Virus record (IMG/VR): IMGVR_UViG_3300047476_002078 | Location: 1 to 64,000 of that record | Strand: one strand, 5' to 3' | DNA: 64,000 bases | Part shown: piece after piece, positions 9,186 to 56,597 of the stretch | Layout: each line of letters starts with the position of its first letter | How positions within the stretch are numbered: position 1 is the first letter of the stretch | The notes under the pieces: model-generated | The model's database searches: none | What the model saw: only the letters and a program-made list of their open reading frames with translations | What the model was told of the DNA's origin: nothing | Program-made: the position numbers and the translations under genes

Positions 9186-9773
9186 ATGAAGAACTTTTAT
9201 GAAATGCAAACAGTTAAATTCAAACTCAAGCCAATACAAAATTTTGAACCTGTTGGAAGTTGCGGGGTGTACGCTTTATCGTACATTACAGGATTAAAGT
9301 TATCTTACATTGATAAATTCACTCCTAAAAAAGGTTGGTGGTCGGATAAAGATATTTTGAAATTTTTAAAAAATTTGGGATATAAATATTTAAAAATATG
9401 TGATTCTACAATCCATCGTCAAAAACTTACTGGAAAGAACTACTATGAAAAAAATATTAACCATTTGAATGTAGTTTTAATATCCCAACATACTACCAAA
9501 GAAGAAGGAAGCTGGGCGGTAGTTTATGATAATAGATACTATCATGGAACAGAAGTTGAATTTTTCAGTGGGTATGAGCTATTAGTAAATCCGTTATGGA
9601 CAGGCTACGTTATTTTTCACCCTAAATGGAAAAGTTCAGCCAAACAAATAAGAGAAAAAATAGATCAAAATTTTTTAGCAATACATAAAATTTGCGGTAA
9701 AAAAAATATTAATGATTATTATCATCCCTCATTATCTATTTGGCATCACTCAGTTTCTAAAAAGTTTAAGTAA
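9186..9773 (+). CDS. Hypothetical protein, possible papain-like cysteine peptidase
   Basis: GSCGVYALS motif plus a later His and W-x-V-V-Y-D segment; weak. Confidence 0.35.
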   Translation: MKNFYEMQTVKFKLKPIQNFEPVGSCGVYALSYITGLKLSYIDKFTPKKGWWSDKDILKFLKNLGYKYLKICDSTIHRQKLTGKNYYEKNINHLNVVLISQHTTKEEGSWAVVYDNRYYHGTEVEFFSGYELLVNPLWTGYVIFHPKWKSSAKQIREKIDQNFLAIHKICGKKNINDYYHPSLSIWHHSVSKKFK

Positions 9774-10415
9774 TTTTTCCCAAGCGTTTGGCTTTAATTC
9801 TAGTTTCGGCTCTGGGATTATTTCAATTTCTAATTCCTTATCTTTTTTTGTAACTGCTTTTTGTTTAACAACTTCTTCATTTTCTTTCGGTTTTTCAGAT
9901 TCAACAACTACTAAAGGATTTTTCCACGGTTTAAGATAACCAAGAAGAACAAAAGAACCAGAATTTCCTATAAGTCTTTTTCTTCTATAAACTCCATCAC
10001 CTTCACGATTAATACCTATACCGTCGCTAGTATTTCCTTCTATCGTAATCATGGTCTTGTTATCTATGATTTTTTCAACGATGCCTGTGTGCCCTGAAGC
10101 TGTAGGTTTTCCGTTTTTGTAATAGTTCCAAATAACAATAGCTCCGACTTCTGGTTTACTTAGACGGGCTTCTTTTGGTGATTTATTCCAACATGTTAAT
10201 ACGTGCTCTGTTTTGAATATCCAAGAACTAATGCCTCCAAATTCATCTGTTTTTTTTATACAGTATTGGACAAAAGACATGCACCAAGGTTCCCCTTGAG
10301 CTTTCCCATCTACAGCTTTTTGAAATTCTTCAACCATTTTCCCCTTGTTTTTACCCGACTCTTTGACTCCAACAAGTTTAGAAGCTATTCCGCATAGTTT
10401 TTGAATCTTATTCAT
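9750..10415 (-). CDS. CHAP-domain peptidoglycan hydrolase (endolysin candidate)
   Basis: EPWCMSFVQ, GHTGIV and TIEGNT motifs. Confidence 0.85.
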   Translation of the reverse strand: MNKIQKLCGIASKLVGVKESGKNKGKMVEEFQKAVDGKAQGEPWCMSFVQYCIKKTDEFGGISSWIFKTEHVLTCWNKSPKEARLSKPEVGAIVIWNYYKNGKPTASGHTGIVEKIIDNKTMITIEGNTSDGIGINREGDGVYRRKRLIGNSGSFVLLGYLKPWKNPLVVVESEKPKENEEVVKQKAVTKKDKELEIEIIPEPKLELKPNAWEKLLKLFRN

Positions 10416-10452
10416 AGGTAATTCCTCCTAAGAATAATATAAATTAAAAGAA

Positions 10453-10749
10453 TTATTGGTTTTGTTTGTAAGATTTCAATAAATCTGGGCGAAATACGTT
10501 TGATTCATATCCGCAGTCACACATCTTAATTAACATTTTTGGTTGATGGAAATTGAAATTAACTATAGGGGCTAATTTTTTGCAACAGGGGCATTTTTCA
10601 TAGCCTAACTCTTGGATATGGTAAATTGAAGAGTCTTTTTTGCCTTTCTTCATTTCTATTGAAATATGATCGAATGACATATCACAAATCAATCTGTCAT
10701 ATATTTCAATTGCTTTTTTTTGCCAAGTTTTTGTCTTTAATTCATTCAT
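10453..10749 (-). CDS. Hypothetical protein with Cys motifs
   Basis: CPCC...CDCG; 98 aa. Confidence 0.5.
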   Translation of the reverse strand: MNELKTKTWQKKAIEIYDRLICDMSFDHISIEMKKGKKDSSIYHIQELGYEKCPCCKKLAPIVNFNFHQPKMLIKMCDCGYESNVFRPDLLKSYKQNQ

Positions 10750-10819
10750 TCTTACCTATTATAGTAGTAATTATTTTTTAATTTATCAGTGATTTATATT
10801 TCTAATAAAAGACAGGGTT

Positions 10820-11746
10820 ATGAATTTAAGAAAAATAGCAGGAAGAGTAGCTTTAAAATATGCGGCATCTGGACCATCCTTTGATTACAAATTTAATGAA
10901 GAGGATTCAGAAAAATTAGTGAGAAATCCTAACCCTCACGGTGTTAAGAAAATGGTGACACAGGAATACGCTGATAGATTTTTGGGGAAACAGCCAAAAA
11001 AATCTCCTGTTGAAAATAAACCTGCTCCTTCAACAATTTCTAAAGCTAAAGAAAATAAGGAAAGAGTAGAAAATCAGAAAAAAACTAATCAAAAGCACTC
11101 GAATGGGATGAATAAACCTGAATACAATAAAAAGGGTGCTGAAGTAACAAAAGATGAATGTGTTTCTTTTATTAAAGAGTTTCACCCTGCTTTTGAAGAA
11201 GCCGCTTCATGGGGAGAAGGGTTTAAAAAATCAGGAGCGATGAGTTTTTCAGGAAGATTAAAAGACGAAAATTCTCTACATGATAAAATGAAAGGAAGAT
11301 TCAAAGAAAGAACTTTGAATTCGGCAGGGGATATTGTAGGAAGTAGAGCTATTTGCAAAAATATGAACGATGTTAAAAAAATCATTTCTCATGTTTATGA
11401 CACTTATGATGTTTTAGAACACGATGATAGTGTAGAAGAAAAAGTAAGACCTGAAGGGTACAGAGCACATCATTTTACAATCAAATCAAGTGATGGTAAA
11501 TTAATTGAACTTCAAGTTAAAACGCAAAATCAACAATTATGGTCAGGGTACACACATGACACAATTTATAAAGCTGAAGACCCTGAAATAATACAAGCCA
11601 AGCCAGATATAGATAAATATACTAAAGCAGTTAGTGACTATATTTATGCTGTGGATACTGGCAAAGACCCCGGTTCTTTTCCAGAAACTCCAGAAATATT
11701 AAAAAAGAAAAATTTAGCTTTCCCTGCTAATGACATAGTGAGATAA
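10820..11746 (+). CDS. Small alarmone synthetase (RelA/SpoT synthetase domain) with N-terminal extension
   Basis: GRLKDENSLHDK, DIVGSR, EHDD, GYRAHH and ELQVKT..QQLW..YTHDTIYK motifs; no hydrolase, TGS or ACT domain. Confidence 0.88.
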   Translation: MNLRKIAGRVALKYAASGPSFDYKFNEEDSEKLVRNPNPHGVKKMVTQEYADRFLGKQPKKSPVENKPAPSTISKAKENKERVENQKKTNQKHSNGMNKPEYNKKGAEVTKDECVSFIKEFHPAFEEAASWGEGFKKSGAMSFSGRLKDENSLHDKMKGRFKERTLNSAGDIVGSRAICKNMNDVKKIISHVYDTYDVLEHDDSVEEKVRPEGYRAHHFTIKSSDGKLIELQVKTQNQQLWSGYTHDTIYKAEDPEIIQAKPDIDKYTKAVSDYIYAVDTGKDPGSFPETPEILKKKNLAFPANDIVR

Positions 11747-11750
11747 GAAA

Positions 11751-11963
11751 ATGAAATACTATCTAGTTATAAGAGATAAAAAAAATAAAAACTTAGACGT
11801 AAAAGAATATCCTACCATGAAAAAAGCTTCCGCAGTAAAAGAAGCTATGCTTAAAAGCGGTCATGAAGGGCAATTAGTAATAGGTTACGGAAGCTCAATG
11901 AATGATTTTTTAACATCATTTACAGAGTATCGACCAAAAAATTGGAAAGATTTAATTAAGTAA
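11751..11963 (+). CDS. Hypothetical protein, 4 bp downstream of the synthetase
   Basis: 70-aa ORF, tight operon spacing. Confidence 0.6.
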   Translation: MKYYLVIRDKKNKNLDVKEYPTMKKASAVKEAMLKSGHEGQLVIGYGSSMNDFLTSFTEYRPKNWKDLIK

Positions 11964-12573
11964 TTTTTTTGGCAGGTATTCCAACATAAATACCACTTTC
12001 TGTTAAATTTTTGACAACTGCGGATTGAGCACCAGTAATTACATTTTCTGATATACAAATTTTTTCTCGAACCGCTGTTCCTGTTCCCAAAGAGGAATAT
12101 TTTCCGATAACTGTGTTACCTGAAATGTGACAGCCCGGATTTGCTGTTACATAATCATCAATTACTGCGTCGTGCCCAACAGTACAGTTAAGATTCAAAA
12201 CAACGTAATCCCCGATTTTAACATTAGTAGTGATTATACACCCTGCGGTTATAATCCCTCCTACACCTATATCAGCATCTTGAACTAAAGCTTTTGGGTG
12301 AACAAATGTTTTCATTGGCTTTAATCCGCTTTTCAATGCTTTTTCTACCATTATTTTTTTAACTTCGGGATTACCTACACCGATTATAAATTCAGCATTT
12401 TGAAATGAATCAAAGTTCCAATTTTTAACAACCTTGTAACTTTTATTTTTTATAATTATTTCTTCAATATTTGTGAAATCATCCACAAAAATAAAATCAG
12501 CATTAAAAGAATCTAAGTGAAAAAAGACTTCCCTTGCAAATCCCCCTGCTCCAAGAATAACTATGTTTTTCAT
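11956..12573 (-). CDS. NeuD/PglD-family sugar acetyltransferase
   Basis: ILGAGGFAREV N-terminus, hexapeptide repeats, VGHD, C-terminal GIPAK. Confidence 0.9.
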   Translation of the reverse strand: MKNIVILGAGGFAREVFFHLDSFNADFIFVDDFTNIEEIIIKNKSYKVVKNWNFDSFQNAEFIIGVGNPEVKKIMVEKALKSGLKPMKTFVHPKALVQDADIGVGGIITAGCIITTNVKIGDYVVLNLNCTVGHDAVIDDYVTANPGCHISGNTVIGKYSSLGTGTAVREKICISENVITGAQSAVVKNLTESGIYVGIPAKKIT

Positions 12574-14654
12574 GAAAGAGCCTCAATAATTCCATTGAAA
12601 ACTTCATCCATTTCTTCATTTGTAATAGTTTCGTAAAACGGTATGCACAATATTCTGTCTGACATGTTTTCAGTTTTTGACAAGTCGTTAAATGCCAAAT
12701 TATCTTTGAAAAAAGGCTGTGCGTGAATAGGTATGTAGTATATTCTGGTGTTAATACCTTTTTTGTTCAAAGATTCAATAACTAAATTTCTTTCTTCTTT
12801 ATTTGATAAAATAATAGGGTAAACCTGATAACCTGAATTAATATTTTTAATTGTTTTTATTGAACTTGTAGAAAATTTTTGTTGATAGTAATCGTGTTTT
12901 TGCTTTTTAATATTTATTTTATTTTCAATAGTATCCATAACAGATAGACCTATAGCAGCATGAAATTCAGAGCATTTTGCATTTGTACCCGATAAGGTTG
13001 AAACATTATTGGTAAAACCAAAATTTATAATTTTTCTGCATTTCTCAATAAAATTTGAATTTTTACTGGTCACTAAGCACCCTTCACCAATACCAAAAGT
13101 TTTGGTTATATGCAGACTGAAAATTTCGCAATCTCCTGCCGACCCTAATTTTGTTTCGTCACTGTACGATGCTCCAAGTGCAGCCGCCGAATCAAAAATT
13201 AAAATTAATCCATGTTTATTAGCAAAGTCTTCGTACTTTTTATAATCACATGTGTAGCCGAGAGCCTGAACGACAATCATGGCTTTTGTATTGGCAGTTA
13301 ATTTTTTTTCTGCGTTTTTAATACATAAATGAATACCTTCTTCTTCAATATCAACTAAGACAGGATTACATTCAGCGTTTAATACAGAATGTGCTGTAGC
13401 AGAAAACGTAAAAGATGGAATTAAAATATCACAGTTCTTTAAATCATGTGCTTTTATAGCAACAGTTAATCCTATTGTTGCGTTATTCATTAAAACTGGG
13501 ACATTATCAAGATTGAGATAGGACTTGAACCTTTCCTCTAACATTTTTACACAGGGTCCGTTGTTAGAGAATGTATTTGATTCATAGGAATCTACTAAAT
13601 ATTTAGCCCAATCTTTGATTTGTGGTGGGTTAGGTTTTAAAACAGGTATCTTTAAAAAAAGATCAGAGTCATCAAAAAATTTACTGGCGTAATTTGGCAA
13701 ATTTTTAATGTCGAATCTTTCGTATCTTTCAGAGATTTCTAAATTCACTTTAGAATTTATCTGAATTTCACTTAAAGCAGAGCTAGATATTATTGAATTT
13801 GGGACATTTACTGTAAAATGGTCTTGTTCTATTTTGTAAACATTCAAACTTAACCCATTAACTGAAATAGAATCTTCTATCTTTAAATCAGCTAGTATCT
13901 CTGGGCAAGAAATTATAAATTCTTTTGATTCCTCTAAGTTGTTAATTGAAGATACAGTCCCTATATTTTTGATTTGACCAGCAAACATATTTCCCTTCCT
14001 ATTTTGTATATCAACCCCAAATATAGGGTATTTATCTAAATCTTTGAAATGCCATCCGATTATTTCACCATTAGATAAAGAATTTGATCTTAAATTATCT
14101 ACGTTATTGACCGTAAAATGAAAAAGAGGGTCAAAATTCTTTTTTAGACACATTAAATTTTTACTATCTTGAATATTATTTTGAATTTTCAAATTTAAAA
14201 AATATCTAAAATTTTGGAGCTTGAAAACAATAGGCTCCTGATTATCTGTAAATAAAGCATGAGCTTCTCTTGTCCAACTCATTAATGTTTGATTATTAAA
14301 AACGATATTATCTTCGGAGAGTATGACAATATCTTCCGGTTGTGCAGAAGATAGAGCTTCTGACAGTTTTGAATAGTGGTGCGTTAAATTTTCAACAAGT
14401 GAATTTTCTGAAGGTAAGTCTATGACGCTGTACAAAATTTTATCTTTATACTTATCAAAAATGTCTTTATTTTCTTCAAACAGTAGAGCTTTCGGCTTTC
14501 CGTTATAATCTTGGTTACATTCTACGAAAACAAAATAATCAACGATGGAAAGTTCATAAACTAATGTTTCTAAAACTGTTAGGGTATGTTTACCGTAATT
14601 TACAATAGGTACACATAAAAAAACTTTTTTTCCAAATTTATTGCTTAATTCCAT
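12570..14654 (-). CDS. Fusion: GT17-like domain + riboflavin-synthase-alpha-like barrel + DegT/DnrJ sugar aminotransferase
   Basis: N: DYFVFVECN..NGKPK, GWHF; aa 223-306: MFAGQIKNIGTV..DSISVNG..VNLE; C: PSFTFSATA, FDSAAALG, SLHITKTFGIGEGC. Confidence 0.85.
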   Translation of the reverse strand: MELSNKFGKKVFLCVPIVNYGKHTLTVLETLVYELSIVDYFVFVECNQDYNGKPKALLFEENKDIFDKYKDKILYSVIDLPSENSLVENLTHHYSKLSEALSSAQPEDIVILSEDNIVFNNQTLMSWTREAHALFTDNQEPIVFKLQNFRYFLNLKIQNNIQDSKNLMCLKKNFDPLFHFTVNNVDNLRSNSLSNGEIIGWHFKDLDKYPIFGVDIQNRKGNMFAGQIKNIGTVSSINNLEESKEFIISCPEILADLKIEDSISVNGLSLNVYKIEQDHFTVNVPNSIISSSALSEIQINSKVNLEISERYERFDIKNLPNYASKFFDDSDLFLKIPVLKPNPPQIKDWAKYLVDSYESNTFSNNGPCVKMLEERFKSYLNLDNVPVLMNNATIGLTVAIKAHDLKNCDILIPSFTFSATAHSVLNAECNPVLVDIEEEGIHLCIKNAEKKLTANTKAMIVVQALGYTCDYKKYEDFANKHGLILIFDSAAALGASYSDETKLGSAGDCEIFSLHITKTFGIGEGCLVTSKNSNFIEKCRKIINFGFTNNVSTLSGTNAKCSEFHAAIGLSVMDTIENKINIKKQKHDYYQQKFSTSSIKTIKNINSGYQVYPIILSNKEERNLVIESLNKKGINTRIYYIPIHAQPFFKDNLAFNDLSKTENMSDRILCIPFYETITNEEMDEVFNGIIEALS

Positions 14655-15084: not shown

Positions 15085-15413
15085 ATTGAAAAAGATTCAC
15101 CGCAACCACAGGTATTTTTGGCATTATGGTTTTCAAATACAAAACCTTTTCCATTAAGACCGTCTTTAAAGTCAAGTGTGACTCCTTTCAGATAGATAGC
15201 GGATTTAGGGTCTATTAAGATGGAGATGTTATCCAAACTTAATATGTTGTCTTTTTCTTTAAACTGAGAAAATTCTATTTTATAAGATAACCCAGAACAT
15301 CCTCCTCCTGTTACAGAGATGCGTAAACCCTTTTCGTTGTTCGCATTTTCGGTACTCCAGATGTCTTTTATTTGTTGGATTGCCTTTTCGGTTACTTCAA
15401 TTATGTTGTTCAT
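15081..15413 (-). CDS. iscA: A-type Fe-S carrier protein (IscA/HesB)
   Basis: GGGCSGLSY and TCGCGESF motifs. Confidence 0.93.
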   Translation of the reverse strand: MNNIIEVTEKAIQQIKDIWSTENANNEKGLRISVTGGGCSGLSYKIEFSQFKEKDNILSLDNISILIDPKSAIYLKGVTLDFKDGLNGKGFVFENHNAKNTCGCGESFSI

Positions 15414-16096
15414 AAAACCTCTTTATCAATTATCGCCGTAATTTGCTCTTTTGATAGAGTTCCATCTATTTCAAAAACTTTAGGAAAATTTGTAGATAAT
15501 TCAATTTCTCCTAAAAAGGGACAGTTTAATTTATTTATAGCAAATTTTTGTCCGTTTATGCTATTCAAAGAGTTTAAATCCTTAGAAATTCTTAAAAAAT
15601 TTTCTCTTACTTTTTCCGTAAAACTGTCACCTTTAGATTCTTCTCTCGTGGAAGAAGTATCACCTCTTTCAAACCTTCGTTTTGTAGCTTCTTCGATAGG
15701 TATATCTAAGAAAAAAATATGAGAGGGGAAAACCTGAATAGCAAATTTTAACAGGTTCCAAATGTCTTGAACTTTGTTTCCACAAGCTACACCATAAGCT
15801 AAACCGCTCATAAATGATCTGTCTGAAACAACAAAATAACCGTCTTCTAAAAGCTGTTTTACCTTGGCGGTATGTTCGGCTCGATCAGCTTGCATTAGCA
15901 GTTCCAATGATGCTGGAGATATTTTTTCATGGCTTAAAACAAAATCTCGAACTTTTAAATTTATCAAAGGGCTTCCGGGTTCTCTAGTCCAAATTGCTTT
16001 GTGCCCTGAATTGATTAATCTTTTTACTAAATTTTCACTGTGACTTGATTTACCACACCCGTCGATTCCTTCAAACACGATATATTTGTTTTCCAT
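15410..16096 (-). CDS. tmk: Thymidylate kinase
   Basis: FEGIDGCGKS, TREPG, QADRAEH and SDRSFMS..AY motifs. Confidence 0.93.
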   Translation of the reverse strand: MENKYIVFEGIDGCGKSSHSENLVKRLINSGHKAIWTREPGSPLINLKVRDFVLSHEKISPASLELLMQADRAEHTAKVKQLLEDGYFVVSDRSFMSGLAYGVACGNKVQDIWNLLKFAIQVFPSHIFFLDIPIEEATKRRFERGDTSSTREESKGDSFTEKVRENFLRISKDLNSLNSINGQKFAINKLNCPFLGEIELSTNFPKVFEIDGTLSKEQITAIIDKEVL

Positions 16097-19035: not shown

Positions 19036-21279
19036 ATGAAATCCAACAAAATTGAAAATAAAATTATTGAGACAACTGCTTGGTACGCCAAAACTTTTAA
19101 AGAAAGTCACGGCACTTCCTACGCTTTTAGAAATTTTAAAGTTCTAAAATTTTTAGGGGAAACCTCAAAAGCTTATCATGTTGATGTAGAGTTTTTTTCA
19201 GGTATCTCTTGCACTTGCGGAGTCTGCGGAAGGATTCTATCGAACGCAGTTTCTAAAGCGACTGGAATTGGTCCCGTTTGTGCTGAAAAAATAGGTCTTC
19301 CAAGACCAACACTAGAGTCGGCAAAAGAAACCGTTAAATTAATGGAATCTTTATCACAACAACAAGGTCAATTTACAAGTATTTGGATTCCAAAATCACA
19401 AATTAAAAGAATCGTAGGTGAAGACGGACAAATAATCGAAGGAGACTCTCCTGAATCTGAAAATGATTCAGAAAAAGTAGAAGTTAAATTAGAACATGAG
19501 ATAAAAGTTTCAGGTCAAGAAGTTACTTTCAAATTTAAAGGCGGAGATTTCCAAAATATTTTGAATAAGATGCGTTCAATGAACGGTAAGTGGGATGCTT
19601 CTTCTAAGTCATGGGTAGTATCTCTACAAAATGTAAAAAAAGAATCAAACTCCCTTAAACTTTTAGGATTTAATTTTGATTTAAGCGTGGAAGATGCAGA
19701 AGTCGAAAAGCCTTTGATGCAAATATCCATTGAAGATGATACTGCAATTATCAATTCACCTTATAACTCTCAATTGGTTAATTTTTTCAGAAATAACTCA
19801 GGGTTTATTTATAACGCTTCAAATCACTCAAGAAAGATTAACATTATTTCAGGAGCAGAGACTCTAAAAAAACTTATAGAATTTGCAAAGAATATAGGAT
19901 TTGAAGTTGATGAATCTATAAGCTCTCACCTTGAGGATTTAAAACAAAAGAAAATCGAACTTGAAGCAACAAAAAAAGATTTCACGATTGATCTAAATCT
20001 TGGAATGAAGGTTAAACCATACCCATATCAAATGGCAGGAATTAAGTTCATTGATCTTGCTAACGGCAGAGCAATTGTTGGAGATGAGATGGGTCTTGGA
20101 AAAACTATGCAGGCTTTAGGATGGGTAGCTTGGAGAAAAAAGAAAGCTCTTGTTATTTGTCCTAATTCTTATAAACTCGGTTGGGCTAGAGAGATAACTA
20201 AGTTCACAAATTGCACTAGCCAAGTTTTAGGAAGTAAAAATGTTGAATTTGAGCAATCTGATTTTACGATTATCAACTATGAAAATATTAAAAAACATGA
20301 TTTTTCAAAATTAAATTACGATACAGTTATTATTGATGAATCTCATAAAATTAAAAATTCTAAAACACAAAGATTCGAGTCTTGTGATAAAATTGTATCC
20401 AAATCAAAACATGTAATTTTGCTGACAGGTACAGCGATTGTTAATAGACCTGTTGAATTTTACACACAGCTTAAAATGGTTTCACCTTCATTAGTCGGTT
20501 CTTATGGTTCTTATACTGCTAAATTTTGTGGAGGTCACAATAACGGTTACGGTTGGGATACTAATGGGGCTACGAACTTGGATGAGTTAAGCAAACTTAT
20601 TTCTCCTATCTACCTTCGCAGGATTAAATCAGAAGTTCTTACTGAGTTACCTTCAAAAATTCATCAAGATATAATGATTGAAGGGGTTAAAGTAAAATTA
20701 AATAGACATTCAAAAAACGCTCTTGATGAAATTAATAATCTGAAAATTGAGTTAGCTAAGGAAAAAGTTAGTCATACAATCGAGTTCGTCGAAAACATGG
20801 TTGAGAATGGGGACAAGGTAATTGTTTTCAGTGACTATATTGAGACTGCTAAAAGTATAGCAGATGCTCTTGGAGAAAAAGCTGTATGCTATTTAAGTGA
20901 ACTTTCAACAGAAGAAAGATTCGAGATTGAAAAGAAATTTCAAGAAGATGAAAATGTAAGAGTTTTTGTCGCCACTATGAAAGTCGCAGGGGTAGCACTT
21001 ACTTTAACGGCAGCTAACAAAGTATGTTTTAATGATCTTCCGTGGACTCCGGGCGATTTAAGACAGTGTGAAGATAGAGCACATAGAATCGGTCAAAAAA
21101 ATTCAGTAAATGTTTACAAGATGGTAGCTGAAGGAACGCTGGACGAGTACATTAATGATCTTCTAAACGACAAAATACGTATTCTTGATGCGGTACTTGA
21201 TGGAAAAGAAATTTCGTCTTCTGATAGAGCTATCTTAGATTTATCAATAGAATCAAAGCTTTGTAATATGGTGCGTTAA
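19036..21279 (+). CDS. SNF2-family helicase with N-terminal zinc finger and HARP-like region
   Basis: CGVCGRIL..S.ATGIGPVC; GDEMGLGKT, IIDESH, LLTGT and QCEDRAHRIGQ motifs. Confidence 0.9.
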   Translation: MKSNKIENKIIETTAWYAKTFKESHGTSYAFRNFKVLKFLGETSKAYHVDVEFFSGISCTCGVCGRILSNAVSKATGIGPVCAEKIGLPRPTLESAKETVKLMESLSQQQGQFTSIWIPKSQIKRIVGEDGQIIEGDSPESENDSEKVEVKLEHEIKVSGQEVTFKFKGGDFQNILNKMRSMNGKWDASSKSWVVSLQNVKKESNSLKLLGFNFDLSVEDAEVEKPLMQISIEDDTAIINSPYNSQLVNFFRNNSGFIYNASNHSRKINIISGAETLKKLIEFAKNIGFEVDESISSHLEDLKQKKIELEATKKDFTIDLNLGMKVKPYPYQMAGIKFIDLANGRAIVGDEMGLGKTMQALGWVAWRKKKALVICPNSYKLGWAREITKFTNCTSQVLGSKNVEFEQSDFTIINYENIKKHDFSKLNYDTVIIDESHKIKNSKTQRFESCDKIVSKSKHVILLTGTAIVNRPVEFYTQLKMVSPSLVGSYGSYTAKFCGGHNNGYGWDTNGATNLDELSKLISPIYLRRIKSEVLTELPSKIHQDIMIEGVKVKLNRHSKNALDEINNLKIELAKEKVSHTIEFVENMVENGDKVIVFSDYIETAKSIADALGEKAVCYLSELSTEERFEIEKKFQEDENVRVFVATMKVAGVALTLTAANKVCFNDLPWTPGDLRQCEDRAHRIGQKNSVNVYKMVAEGTLDEYINDLLNDKIRILDAVLDGKEISSSDRAILDLSIESKLCNMVR

Positions 21280-56521: not shown

Positions 56522-56597
56522 TGGAGCGGGCGAAGGGGTTTGAACCCTCGACATCCAGATTGGAAATCTGGCACTCTACCAACTGAGCTACGCCCGC
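56522..56597 (-). tRNA. trnG: tRNA-Gly(TCC)
   Basis: 76-nt cloverleaf GCGGGCG..., anticodon arm CCAGA-TTTCCAA-TCTGG, T-loop TTCAAAC, encoded CCA. Confidence 0.96.

What the first reader, a model, noticed from the sequence alone, without database searches (positions are those of the whole stretch)
10820..11963. Phage small alarmone synthetase with EXDD motif and a tightly linked 70-aa partner
Seen: all four synthetase motifs, EHDD at the RXKD/EXDD position, a ~130-aa low-complexity N-terminal extension, and a small ORF 4 bp downstream. Known: toxSAS enzymes occur in two-gene TA-like loci and make (p)ppGpp or (p)ppApp, or pyrophosphorylate tRNA CCA ends. Inference: a host shut-off or stringent-response-hijacking enzyme, with 11751 as a possible antidote.
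Basis: partly seen in the sequence, partly recalled or inferred. Interest (0 to 1): 0.75.

Follow-up and report, generated by a model that had tools for sequence, protein, structure and literature searches.

The report
Jumbo-phage alarmone-synthetase enzyme with plug-like inhibitor
A freshwater jumbo phage carries an intact RelA/SpoT-type pyrophosphokinase gene followed by a 70-residue protein that looks like the known active-site "plug" antitoxins of toxic alarmone synthetases; the same two pieces are fused into one chain in many giant multi-domain phage proteins.

Summary
Both ORFs are real. 10820-11746 (+) encodes a 308-aa RelA/SpoT synthetase (Pfam E 2e-15) with every donor-ATP and catalytic residue kept. 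11751-11963 (+) encodes a 70-aa protein 4 nt downstream.

The partner is co-conserved. A homologous domain follows the synthetase in 9 of 9 related phage loci examined. In at least 24 of the next-closest synthetase domains it is fused directly C-terminal, inside 300-2750-aa phage "polyvalent" proteins carrying NUDIX, SNF2 or SAM-lyase domains.

The partner model (pLDDT 97) has a beta-beta-alpha-beta fold. Its best match among 48,161 PDB chains is the antitoxin ATfaRel2 (Z 4.8), and rank 5 is the CapRel pseudo-zinc-finger domain.

A complex prediction passed its controls (0.84 against 0.41). It places the partner's beta3 strand and invariant FxEY motif on the ATP-donor residues R146, K148, S152 and R176.

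Best reading: a phage-borne pyrophosphokinase restrained by a split, CapRel/FaRel2-style inhibitor. The acceptor substrate (tRNA CCA end, GDP/GTP or ATP) is unresolved.

The phage also encodes an alarmone hydrolase elsewhere.

Verdict: a new variant of a known kind.

The parts
10820..11746 (+). Gene for a 308-aa RelA/SpoT-type pyrophosphokinase (SAS / toxSYNTH-like)
   Evidence: ORF. PF04607 E 2e-15. AF2 model pLDDT 92. Structural Z 16.5 to RelQ, 16.1 to RelP and 16.0 to CapRel. dN/dS 0.10 against L003.
10826..10870 (+). N-terminal amphipathic helix (residues 3-17, RKIAGRVALKYAA), conserved as '(K/R)(I/L)A..I..R' in the solo family
   Evidence: Alignment A1. Modelled as H3-17 with pLDDT 70-79. 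Function unknown.
10913..10984 (+). Portable N-terminal motif KLVRNPNPHGVKKMVTQEYADRFL (residues 32-55)
   Evidence: As conserved as the catalytic core. Recurs in a second, unrelated 205-aa protein of the same genome (G000:C1:120680-121297): HMM E 1.5e-10, BLASTP 56% identity over 34 aa. Modelled as a hairpin plus helix, pLDDT about 89.
11132..11743 (+). Catalytic core shared with all relatives (residues 105-308)
   Evidence: The core HMM matches residues 105-307 and the equivalent part of fused relatives. PDB matches start at about residue 97-111.
11255..11287 (+). Donor-ATP phosphate motif R146-x-K148-x3-S152-x3-K156 (beta1/alpha)
   Evidence: Invariant. Equivalent to FaRel2 R64/K66/S70/K74 (PMC11782079). 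Residues 141-149 and 151-152 lie in the predicted partner interface.
11330..11347 (+). D171-x2-G174-x-R176 (Mg2+ aspartate and adenine-clamping arginine)
   Evidence: D171 and R176 are invariant. R176 lies in the predicted interface. Equivalent to FaRel2 D90/R95 and CapRel R116 (PMC11782079, PMC9712102).
11417..11428 (+). EHDD at the EXDD/RXKD position (residues 200-203)
   Evidence: HMMER alignment to RelP/RelQ. E-H-D is invariant in the solo family only. Not in the predicted partner interface.
11456..11473 (+). G-loop GYRAHH (G213-H218), with the acceptor-base-stacking tyrosine Y214
   Evidence: G213, Y214, A216 and H218 are invariant. Equivalent to CapRel Y155 and FaRel2 Y128. Left free in the predicted complex.
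11507..11524 (+). ELQVKT (E230-T235), the catalytic Glu/Gln strand
   Evidence: E230, Q232 and T235 are invariant and K234 is nearly so. Equivalent to ExQxRT of RSH enzymes.
11751..11963 (+). Gene for the 70-aa partner: a pZFD/ATfaRel2-like beta-beta-alpha-beta domain, predicted inhibitor of the donor site
   Evidence: Present after the SAS in 9 of 9 loci and fused in at least 24 relatives. AF2 pLDDT 96.9. Rank 1 of 48,161 PDB chains is ATfaRel2 (Z 4.8) and rank 5 is the CapRel pZFD. Complex score 0.84 against 0.41 for the best control. dN/dS about 0.02.
11871..11891 (+). Partner beta3 strand (residues 41-47, QLVIGYG)
   Evidence: Modelled as E42-47. Residues 40-48 lie in the predicted interface against SAS beta1. 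Same role as ATfaRel2 I42-T46 and CapRel V338-A341 (PMC11782079, PMC9712102).
11919..11930 (+). Invariant F57-T-E59-Y60 motif (FxEY), counterpart of the YXXY neutralisation motif
   Evidence: F57, E59 and Y60 are invariant in 32 solo and fused copies. A short helical turn at 58-60. Residues 55-60 lie in the predicted interface.

Best explanation
The two genes encode an enzyme and its cognate active-site inhibitor.

The 308-aa protein is a catalytically competent RelA/SpoT-family pyrophosphokinase that moves the beta,gamma-pyrophosphate of ATP onto a 3'-OH. It carries a basic, structured, family-specific N-terminal extension.

The 70-aa protein is a pseudo-zinc-finger-type (ATfaRel2 / CapRel-pZFD-like) domain. 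It extends the enzyme's beta-sheet at strand beta1. It places its invariant FxEY turn on the adenine/phosphate clamp of the ATP-donor pocket (R146, K148, S152, R176). This keeps the enzyme off while leaving the acceptor site (Y214) open.

The pair is the split form of a synthetase-inhibitor tandem that arose once. In sister lineages that tandem is one polypeptide embedded in large phage polyvalent proteins with NUDIX, SNF2-helicase and SAM-lyase domains. It is therefore a self-restrained phage effector, not a plasmid-style addiction pair. Some event must displace the partner to release activity.

What is shown: domain identity, intact motifs, linkage and fusion, fold similarity, and a prediction of binding at the donor site. 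What is inferred: inhibition, the trigger, and the acceptor.

My split for the acceptor:
- tRNA 3'-CCA end, about 0.45. Every characterised pZFD-controlled toxSAS is a tRNA pyrophosphokinase, and the N-terminus is basic (+11).
- GDP/GTP giving (p)ppGpp, about 0.35.
- ATP/ADP giving (p)ppApp, about 0.15.

The alarmone hydrolase encoded elsewhere in the genome could reverse any of these products.
For: 1. Enzyme identity and integrity:
- Pfam PF04607 E 2e-15.
- Invariant donor and catalytic residues in 17 and in 44 sequences.
- Model pLDDT 92.
- Z 16.5 to RelQ, 16.1 to RelP and 16.0 to CapRel. CapRel has the longest aligned span (199 residues) and is the top Foldseek hit at E 1.8e-9.

2. Linkage:
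- The partner gene lies directly downstream, with a 4-bp overlap or a few-nt gap, in L003, L004, L006, L007, L010, L011, L008, L009 and L002. Flanking genes differ between these loci.
- The partner HMM finds the domain fused 10-40 residues after the SAS domain in P0021, P0023-26, P0028-36, P0038-44, P0046 and P0047.
- It is a separate gene near P0027 and forms the N-terminus of the next protein after P0045.
- All partner-linked synthetases form one clade of 45 rows (SH-aLRT 93). Portal-MuF-SAS fusions lie outside it and lack the partner.

3. Partner fold:
- pLDDT 96.9, topology E-E-H-E-H.
- In an exhaustive structural scan, rank 1 is 8pu3_A ATfaRel2 (Z 4.8, rmsd 2.7 A, 61 of 70 residues) and rank 5 is 7ztb_A residues 285-350, the CapRel pZFD.

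4. Binding mode:
- Complex score 0.84 against 0.41 for the best control. That mark was reached by 51 of 78 solved complexes and 2 of 108 mismatched pairs.
- The interface is SAS 141-149, 151-152, 176, 178 and 236-247 with partner 40-48 and 55-60.
- This matches the published ATfaRel2:FaRel2 and closed-CapRel geometry (PMC11782079, PMC9712102).
- The partner's invariant F57, E59 and Y60 fall in that interface.

5. Both genes are under purifying selection.

6. The fused P0023 aligns colinearly to the CapRel family model PDC-S33 from the SAS into the partner region: residues 43-260 against profile positions 64-300 of 349.
Against: - No activity, toxicity or binding has been measured.
- Sequence homology of the partner to the pZFD is not demonstrable. 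hhalign gives E 0.1-0.3, although in the expected register. Foldseek finds nothing for the partner at E < 0.001.
- The structural Z-scores (4.8 and 4.2) are below the level that alone proves a shared fold for a small alpha/beta domain (note).
- The complex score is a model's own confidence and could partly reflect memory of 8PU1-4.
- By sequence and by Z the catalytic domain is as close to the non-toxic (p)ppGpp synthetases RelQ/RelP as to CapRel, and much closer than to FaRel2 (Z 8.3). The tRNA reading rests on analogy.
- CapRel's pZFD is its fastest-evolving part, whereas this partner is highly conserved.
Confidence: 0.6

Rival explanations
1. Nucleotide alarmone synthetase. The enzyme makes (p)ppGpp (stringent-response hijack or host shut-off) or (p)ppApp (ATP depletion), not modified tRNA. 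The partner is its regulatory subunit.
For: - Best sequence matches are RelQ/YjbM, RelP and long RSH enzymes: PDB profile E 7.6e-8 against 7e-4 for FaRel2, and NCBIfam YjbM E 4e-10.
- Highest structural Z is to RelQ bound to pppGpp.
- The G-loop keeps the Tyr and His of guanosine-type motifs (G-Y-R-A-H-H), and ELQVKT resembles ExQxRT. It does not match the GxN / YH signatures reported for the Apk2 (p)ppApp synthetases (PMC12226406).
- The phage carries a small alarmone hydrolase with an intact HD...EDT motif.
Against: - Characterised alarmone-making toxins (Tas1, FaRel, Apk2) are neutralised at the acceptor site by Tis1/IapK-type proteins. Donor-site pZFD plugs go with tRNA-targeting enzymes (PMC11782079).
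- The housekeeping enzymes RelQ and RelP have no such partner.
- Alarmone hydrolases also reverse tRNA pyrophosphorylation according to the toxSAS literature (PMC7229694), so the hydrolase does not discriminate.
Confidence: 0.35
2. Classical toxSAS type II toxin-antitoxin or abortive-infection module, used for superinfection exclusion or addiction as with Phrann gp29/gp30. The antitoxin is labile, or senses a trigger from a competing phage.
For: - A conserved bicistronic, translationally coupled arrangement is the criterion used to find toxSAS TA systems (PMC7229694).
- The partner resembles a solved toxSAS antitoxin.
- Phages are known to carry PhRel, PhRel2 and CapRel.
Against: - The host genomes are 180-480-kb phages, with no evidence of lysogeny seen here.
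- The two domains are very often one polypeptide inside multi-domain effector proteins, so differential stability cannot be the general mechanism.
- The partner is under strong purifying selection and shows no sign of arms-race variability.
- tblastn finds no similarity to phage PhRel or PhRel2 at E < 1e-3.
Confidence: 0.2
3. The partner is a positive cofactor, chaperone or specificity subunit rather than an inhibitor.
For: Fusion and co-conservation prove only a functional link. The fused forms must be active in some state.
Against: - The predicted interface covers the residues that bind donor ATP.
- The closest structural analogues are both inhibitors.
- The invariant aromatic-x-x-aromatic motif matches the neutralisation motif (PMC9712102).
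Confidence: 0.08

Closest known systems
CapRel(SJ46) fused toxSAS-antitoxin (tRNA pyrophosphokinase; PDB 7ZTB)
   Same: - toxSYNTH-type catalytic domain: top Foldseek hit and Z 16.0 over 199 residues.
- It is followed by a small beta-beta-alpha-beta domain with an aromatic-x-x-aromatic motif, which is modelled to plug the ATP-donor site between two arginines.
- The fused relatives of the window's pair have the same domain order as CapRel and align colinearly to the CapRel model PDC-S33.
   Different: - About 18% identity.
- The partner is a separate gene here.
- The motif is FxEY, not YxxY.
- There are no alpha-helical anchor regions.
- The partner is conserved rather than hypervariable.
- It is encoded by lytic-looking jumbo phages and polyvalent proteins rather than acting as a bacterial or prophage defence gene.
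- Partner-to-pZFD sequence homology is not significant.
FaRel2-ATfaRel2 toxin-antitoxin pair (PDB 8PU1-8PU4)
   Same: - A two-gene system with a ~73-aa structured antitoxin. That antitoxin is the best structural match of the partner.
- The predicted interface (antitoxin beta3 on toxin beta1, aromatic motif in the donor pocket, acceptor site free) mirrors the crystal structure described in PMC11782079.
   Different: - The catalytic domain is only distantly similar (Z 8.3).
- ATfaRel2 has an extra C-terminal beta/alpha element.
- FaRel2 occurs in Firmicutes and Actinobacteria chromosomes.
- Nothing here shows a 2:2 assembly.
RelA/SpoT domains of phage polyvalent proteins (Iyer et al. 2017, PMC5512222)
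   Same: The nearest relatives of the window's enzyme are such domains, in proteins with NUDIX, SNF2 helicase and SAM-lyase modules. The paper notes that solo versions of polyvalent-protein domains occur in related phages.
   Different: - The window's gene is a solo version.
- In what I read of that paper, RelA/SpoT co-occurs only with LPD3 and no inhibitor domain next to it is mentioned. The proteins here gave no LPD hit.
Apk2 MuF toxins with IapK and Aph1 immunity (PMC12226406) and Tas1-Tis1
   Same: - A phage-borne RelA/SpoT-type toxin domain with a protein inhibitor, plus an alarmone hydrolase somewhere in the genome.
- Portal-MuF-SAS fusions appear among more distant hits.
   Different: - No MuF domain.
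- The Syn signatures differ (A-H-H and V-K, not G-x-N and Y-H).
- The inhibitor is pZFD-like and predicted at the donor site, not a Tis1/IapK acceptor-site blocker.
- The MuF fusions fall outside the partner-linked clade.
- Tas1 scores Z 12.5.
RelQ / RelP housekeeping small alarmone synthetases
   Same: Highest structural Z (16.5 and 16.1) and the best sequence E-values. All Syn motifs are shared.
   Different: - About 20% identity.
- RelQ and RelP have no N-terminal extension and no partner. They tetramerise through a C-terminal helix bundle and are not toxic (PMC7229694).

Membership tests
RelA/SpoT homologue synthetase domain (PF04607) | Profile match above the curated threshold | tested here: met
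   57.5 bits against a cut-off of 27, E 2e-15. 60.1 bits in the genome scan.
RelA/SpoT homologue synthetase domain (PF04607) | Syn motifs: RxKxxxSxxxK, DxxGxR, G-loop GY..H, ExQx(R/K)T | tested here: met
   All are present and invariant or nearly invariant in 17 and in 44 sequences.
RelA/SpoT homologue synthetase domain (PF04607) | Synthetase fold | tested here: met
   Model pLDDT 92. Z 16.5 to RelQ and 16.0 to CapRel.
RelA/SpoT homologue synthetase domain (PF04607) | Pyrophosphate transfer from ATP to a 3'-OH acceptor | not testable with these tools
   Needs an enzyme assay.
toxSAS toxin-antitoxin modules (Jimmy et al. 2020) | SAS gene in a conserved two- or three-gene arrangement with a small neighbour | tested here: met
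   9 of 9 loci, with a 4-bp overlap or a few-nt gap.
toxSAS toxin-antitoxin modules (Jimmy et al. 2020) | Growth inhibition on expression, neutralised by the cognate partner | not testable with these tools
   Only a binding prediction is available.
toxSAS toxin-antitoxin modules (Jimmy et al. 2020) | Membership of a validated subfamily (FaRel, FaRel2, PhRel, PhRel2, CapRel) | tested here: inconclusive
   - CapRel is the top Foldseek hit, but RelQ/RelP score the same.
- The CapRel family model gives 51.8 bits for the window protein, against 290 bits for true CapRel.
- No phage PhRel or PhRel2 hit at E < 1e-3.
- No tree with named references was built.
pZFD-type toxSAS inhibitor (ATfaRel2 / CapRel C-terminal domain) | Three-stranded antiparallel sheet with a helix between strands 2 and 3 | tested here: met
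   E2-8, E14-20, H23-35, E42-47; pLDDT 96.9.
pZFD-type toxSAS inhibitor (ATfaRel2 / CapRel C-terminal domain) | Structural similarity to the solved domains | tested here: met
   Rank 1 (8pu3_A, Z 4.8, 61 residues) and rank 5 (7ztb_A 285-350, Z 4.2) of 48,161 chains. The absolute Z is modest, and Foldseek found nothing.
pZFD-type toxSAS inhibitor (ATfaRel2 / CapRel C-terminal domain) | Conserved YXXY motif after strand 3, forming a short helix | tested here: inconclusive
   FxEY (F57, E59, Y60) is invariant in 32 copies, 10 residues after strand 3, with a helical turn at 58-60. The first aromatic is Phe, not Tyr.
pZFD-type toxSAS inhibitor (ATfaRel2 / CapRel C-terminal domain) | Docks on the ATP-donor site by beta-sheet extension | tested here: met
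   Prediction only. Score 0.84 against 0.41 for the best control; that mark was reached by 51 of 78 solved complexes and 2 of 108 mismatched pairs. Contacts include R146, K148, S152 and R176, and partner residues 40-48 and 55-60.
pZFD-type toxSAS inhibitor (ATfaRel2 / CapRel C-terminal domain) | Detectable sequence homology | tested here: not met
   hhalign E 0.32 and 0.1. No PDB, Pfam or PHROG sequence hit. The two solved examples also lack sequence similarity to each other (PMC11782079).
Phage polyvalent proteins (Iyer et al. 2017) | Several unrelated effector domains in one large polypeptide | tested here: not met
   The window's protein has one catalytic domain. Its sister clade does meet this feature.
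Apk2 / MuF polymorphic toxins | N-terminal MuF domain; IapK (Tis1-like) immunity; Apk-type Syn signatures | tested here: not met
   No MuF hit. The motifs differ. The partner's fold matches pZFD-type inhibitors instead.

The most novel reading that the evidence does not exclude
The synthetase-plug tandem is an offensive counterpart of CapRel. It would be a self-inhibited tRNA (or nucleotide) pyrophosphokinase that phages package or express as part of their invasion toolkit. In the solo proteins it would be targeted by the portable N-terminal KLVxNPNxxGxKxxxTQxYADR motif. It would switch on when the plug is displaced, by processing, by a host factor or by a rival phage. The phage's own alarmone hydrolase would then reset the cell. 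This would make pZFD-gated toxSYNTH modules a shared weapon of both sides, and possibly place the evolutionary source of CapRel-type defence genes in phage polyvalent proteins.
Probability: 0.2. Interest if true: 0.8.

Novelty: new variant of a known kind. Interest (0 to 1): 0.66.

Why it matters
Toxic alarmone synthetases and their pZFD plugs are known mainly as bacterial or prophage defence modules (CapRel, FaRel2). Three things are new here.

- The same enzyme-plus-plug logic, in a distinct and previously unnamed clade, is widespread in large lytic-looking phages.
- The split and fused forms together give a natural "Rosetta stone" for the interaction.
- The ~65-aa domain next to RelA/SpoT modules of polyvalent proteins, which has no Pfam or PHROG family, gets a concrete and testable function.

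This gives a handle on what phage-delivered RelA/SpoT domains do. It bears on how a phage could switch translation or nucleotide pools off and, with its own hydrolase, back on. It also bears on the origin of CapRel-type immunity.

Tried and rejected
- Close DNA relatives among 50,697 phage records: none. tblastn gave only 7 weak hits, the best being Nitrososphaera provirus Pro-Nvie1 at 28%.
- A scan of viral contigs with the family profile found a single locus.
- The word-based protein search for the 70-aa partner found only near-identical copies. Its relatives had to be found through gene neighbourhoods and an HMM.
- The extra C-terminal tail of P0006 is not a fused partner (no Pfam hit).
- Partner against CapRel pZFD by hhalign, with a single sequence and with a 19-member family: right register but not significant. 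Sequence homology is therefore not claimed.
- Partner against PDB by sequence gave nothing. By Foldseek there was nothing at E < 0.001, and the top hit was GIY-YIG at E 0.5.
- The ESM Atlas structure search gave unnamed 71-93-aa Actinomycetota clusters (TM 0.71) and DUF6718 (TM 0.60). These are leads only, and no paper mentions DUF6718.
- The promoter/terminator scan was no better than shuffles.
- NUDIX and MazG are absent from the genome.
- An alarmone-hydrolase search in related phage records was possible for only one 47%-complete record, and it was negative.
There is no expression evidence.
- The second protein that shares the N-terminal motif has no Pfam or PHROG family. Its 'ParB-like' look is by eye only.
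Full report
**What is there.** The window is the first 64 kb of a 355,874-bp virus record with terminal repeats. It has 33.9% G+C and five tRNA genes. Near-identical sequence occurs in several freshwater and lake metagenomes.

ORF 10820-11746 (+) encodes 308 aa. ORF 11751-11963 (+) encodes 70 aa, after a 4-nt spacer. The pair forms a small plus-strand island. Upstream on the minus strand are a 98-aa Cys-rich ORF and a CHAP peptidoglycan hydrolase. Downstream on the minus strand are PglD-like acetyltransferase and aminotransferase genes.

**The enzyme.** The 308-aa protein matches PF04607 RelA_SpoT at E 2e-15, residues 145-253. It is the only such gene in the genome.

Seventeen homologs at 40-78% identity were found, several on contigs of 180-480 kb. 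Across them the following are invariant, and most remain so when 27 fused relatives are added:
- the donor-ATP motif R146-x-K148-x3-S152-x3-K156
- D171-x2-G174-x-R176
- the G-loop G213-Y214..H218
- E230-x-Q232-x-K234-T235
- H246, Y250 and K251

An AlphaFold2 model has pLDDT 92. Its core superposes on RelQ (Z 16.5), RelP (16.1) and CapRel (16.0). CapRel has the longest aligned span at 199 residues and is the best Foldseek E-value at 1.8e-9. Tas1 scores 12.5, long RSH enzymes about 10, and FaRel2 8.3. The active site therefore looks competent, but the fold comparison does not say which acceptor it uses.

**Corrections to the observation.**
- EHDD (200-203) does sit at the EXDD/RXKD position.
- Only E-H-D is fixed, and only in the solo family. 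Fused relatives show E-x-[DEQN]-D with exceptions. CapRel has EYDY and RelP/RelQ have ERDY at this position. It is the ordinary state of monofunctional synthetases, not a special mark.
- The N-terminal extension is about 104 residues, not 130.
- It is not low-complexity: no 12-mer falls below 2.2 bits.
- It is strongly basic (+11).
- It contains a motif at residues 32-55 that is as conserved as the catalytic core.
- Most of it is modelled with confidence.

**The partner is real and tightly coupled.** The word-based search found only near-identical copies, so I went through neighbourhoods. In L003, L004, L006, L007, L010, L011 and L002, a 69-73-aa ORF lies immediately downstream of the synthetase, overlapping by 4 bp or a few nt away. 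These ORFs are 44-90% identical to the window's partner.

In L008 and L009 the same domain is the N-terminal third of a 190-206-aa downstream protein. That makes 9 of 9 loci, with different flanking genes.

Against L003, dN/dS is 0.10 for the enzyme and about 0.02 for the partner, with dS saturated for the latter.

**The Rosetta-stone result.** A profile of the family, searched against 1.84 billion representative proteins, gave 2,300 hits. After the family itself, the best hits (E 1e-72 to 1e-50) are synthetase domains inside proteins of 300-2,750 aa.

Pfam finds the following in those proteins:
- NUDIX
- SNF2-type helicase
- S-adenosylmethionine lyase
- in more distant hits, portal plus MuF

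These are the "polyvalent proteins" and MuF toxins of the literature (PMC5512222, PMC12226406).

An HMM of the 70-aa partner then found the partner domain fused 10-40 residues after the synthetase domain in at least 24 of these proteins, always in that order. Two proteins end right after the synthetase. For P0027 the partner is a separate 73-aa gene one ORF away. For P0045 it is the N-terminus of the next large protein.

In a maximum-likelihood tree of 96 core domains, all partner-linked enzymes form one clade of 45 rows (SH-aLRT 93). It splits into the solo jumbo-phage family (18 rows, 99) and the polyvalent group (27 rows, 93). Portal-MuF fusions and the other relatives lie outside and have no partner.

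Across 32 solo and fused copies, the invariant partner residues are R8, F57, E59 and Y60.

**What the partner is.** It has no Pfam, PHROG, NCBIfam, PADLOC or PDB sequence match. Its AlphaFold2 model is very confident (pLDDT 96.9). The topology is strand 2-8, strand 14-20, helix 23-35, strand 42-47, helix 50-56, a turn at 58-60, and helix 65-69.

Foldseek found nothing significant. An exhaustive structural alignment against 48,161 PDB representatives gave:
- rank 1: chain A of 8PU3, the antitoxin ATfaRel2 of the FaRel2 toxSAS system (Z 4.8, rmsd 2.7 A, 61 of 70 residues)
- rank 5: residues 285-350 of CapRel (7ZTB), its pseudo-zinc-finger antitoxin domain (Z 4.2)

The Z-scores are modest, as expected for 70 residues, and would not carry the case alone. 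But two of the very few solved toxSAS-inhibitor domains appear among the top five of 48,161 chains, for a protein encoded next to a SAS. That is hard to put down to chance.

Profile-profile comparison with a 19-member CapRel pZFD alignment gave the expected register, with 'QLVIGY' on 'EVLIAV'. It reached only E 0.1, so I claim a shared fold and mechanism, not proven homology. The fused P0023 does align colinearly to the CapRel family model PDC-S33 from the synthetase into the partner region.

**How it probably works.** A complex prediction for residues 100-308 of the enzyme with the partner scored 0.84, and the best of three controls scored 0.41. That mark was reached by 51 of 78 solved complexes and by 2 of 108 mismatched pairs.

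The confident interface comprises:
- on the enzyme: 122-136, 141-149, 151-152, 176, 178 and 236-247. This is strand beta1 with R146, K148 and S152, plus R176, the residues that hold donor ATP.
- on the partner: 40-48 (strand 3) and 55-60 (the FxEY turn).

The G-loop tyrosine Y214 and EHDD are not in the interface.

This is the geometry described for ATfaRel2:FaRel2, where antitoxin beta3 pairs with toxin beta1 and YXXY stacks on R64 and R95 (PMC11782079). It is also the geometry of the closed state of CapRel, where YXXY sits between R79 and R116 (PMC9712102). The pass may partly reflect that solved complex, so it shows likeness and does not prove binding.

I infer that the partner blocks ATP binding and leaves the acceptor site open. 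The fused relatives are the cis version, like CapRel. The window's pair is the trans version, like FaRel2-ATfaRel2.

**What remains open.**
- The acceptor. Published work couples donor-site pZFD plugs to tRNA-pyrophosphorylating enzymes, and acceptor-site blockers (Tis1, IapK) to (p)ppApp synthetases (PMC11782079, PMC12226406). The +11 N-terminus would suit RNA binding. Against that, the core is at least as close to the (p)ppGpp synthetases RelQ and RelP. Its G-loop and ELQVKT motifs are of the guanosine/CapRel type rather than the Apk type.
- The trigger that removes the plug.
- The biological role. The clade's home in polyvalent proteins suggests an effector of the invasion phase or of inter-element conflict (PMC5512222). 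The strong conservation of the partner argues against a CapRel-like arms-race sensor.

**Other facts bearing on the system.**
- The same genome encodes a 178-aa small alarmone hydrolase: HD_4 E 5e-10, with an HD..EDT motif, at 205,431-205,967. Such hydrolases neutralise all tested toxSAS enzymes (PMC7229694), so the phage could reverse the enzyme's product.
- The N-terminal motif KLVRNPNPHGVKKMVTQEYADRFL recurs in an unrelated 205-aa protein of the same genome, so it is a portable module of unknown role.

**Verdict.**
- The TA-like interpretation is half right. The partner is a cognate, probably inhibitory protein, but the context is that of a self-restrained phage effector shared with polyvalent proteins.
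- The kind is known (toxSAS plus pZFD inhibitor; RelA/SpoT in polyvalent proteins).
- I did not find described in the papers I read this clade, its split and fused architecture, or the assignment of the ~65-aa domain.

Noticed in passing
Outside the window: G000:C1:205431-205967 (-), = L014:1357-1893: The same phage encodes a 178-aa small alarmone hydrolase: HD_4 E 5e-10, phrog_990 E 9e-40, motif 'WLHDIVEDTE'. It is unlinked to the synthetase pair and could act as a product-reversing third component.
   Followed up: partly
window 10913-10984, and G000:C1:120680-121297 (+) = L019:2181-2798: The synthetase's N-terminal motif KLVRNPNPHGVKKMVTQEYADRFL recurs as KLVRNPNTDGLKELITQDYADRL in an otherwise unrelated 205-aa protein of the same genome (56% identity over 34 aa; HMM E 1.5e-10). 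That protein has no Pfam or PHROG family. The motif may be a shared docking or packaging signal.
   Followed up: partly
window 19036-21279 (+): A 747-aa protein matches the central part (688-1137 of 1881) of phrog_62 'DNA helicase', plus methyltransferase-type phrogs. This is the SNF2-like module that is fused to the synthetase in polyvalent relatives. Here it is a separate gene 7 kb away.
   Followed up: no
window 9750-10415 (-); L003; L010:2599-3126; L006:5176-5646; L007:5602-6072; L011:5288-5764: In 6 of 9 loci the synthetase pair lies within 1-2 genes of a peptidoglycan hydrolase, of a different family in different phages: CHAP, GH108 or SLT.
   Followed up: no
Alignment A4; fused proteins P0041, P0033, P0025, P0021 and others: Several fused partner domains end in '...EY(R/K)PK-GPGSR'. 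This may be a linker or processing site between modules of polyvalent proteins.
   Followed up: no
L008:2377-2949 and L009:4909-5529: In one subgroup (soil and other samples) the partner carries an extra ~120-aa C-terminal domain ending '...LKDWDYY', with no family hit. The synthetases of this subgroup have a different N-terminal segment. L008 also has Thg1-like and MgtC genes nearby.
   Followed up: partly
P0006 residues 319-459 (L004:4001-5380, a 484-kb contig): One homolog has a 141-aa C-terminal tail of unknown nature and still keeps the separate partner gene. The tail is not partner-like.
   Followed up: partly
window 11956-14654 (-) and 15410-16096 (-): A sugar-modification cluster: a PglD-like acetyltransferase, a 694-aa protein with a DegT-type aminotransferase part, and a thymidylate-kinase-like gene. 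It is conserved next to the pair in L003 and L010.
   Followed up: no
window 10400-12600: A lake-water metatranscriptome run holds 21% of the sampled words of this stretch.
   Followed up: partly
window 56522-56597 (-): tRNA-Gly(TCC). The genome has five tRNAs in all: Gly, Leu, Met, Gln and Arg. FaRel2 is reported to target tRNA-Gly and tRNA-Thr (abstract listed). No link was tested.
   Followed up: no
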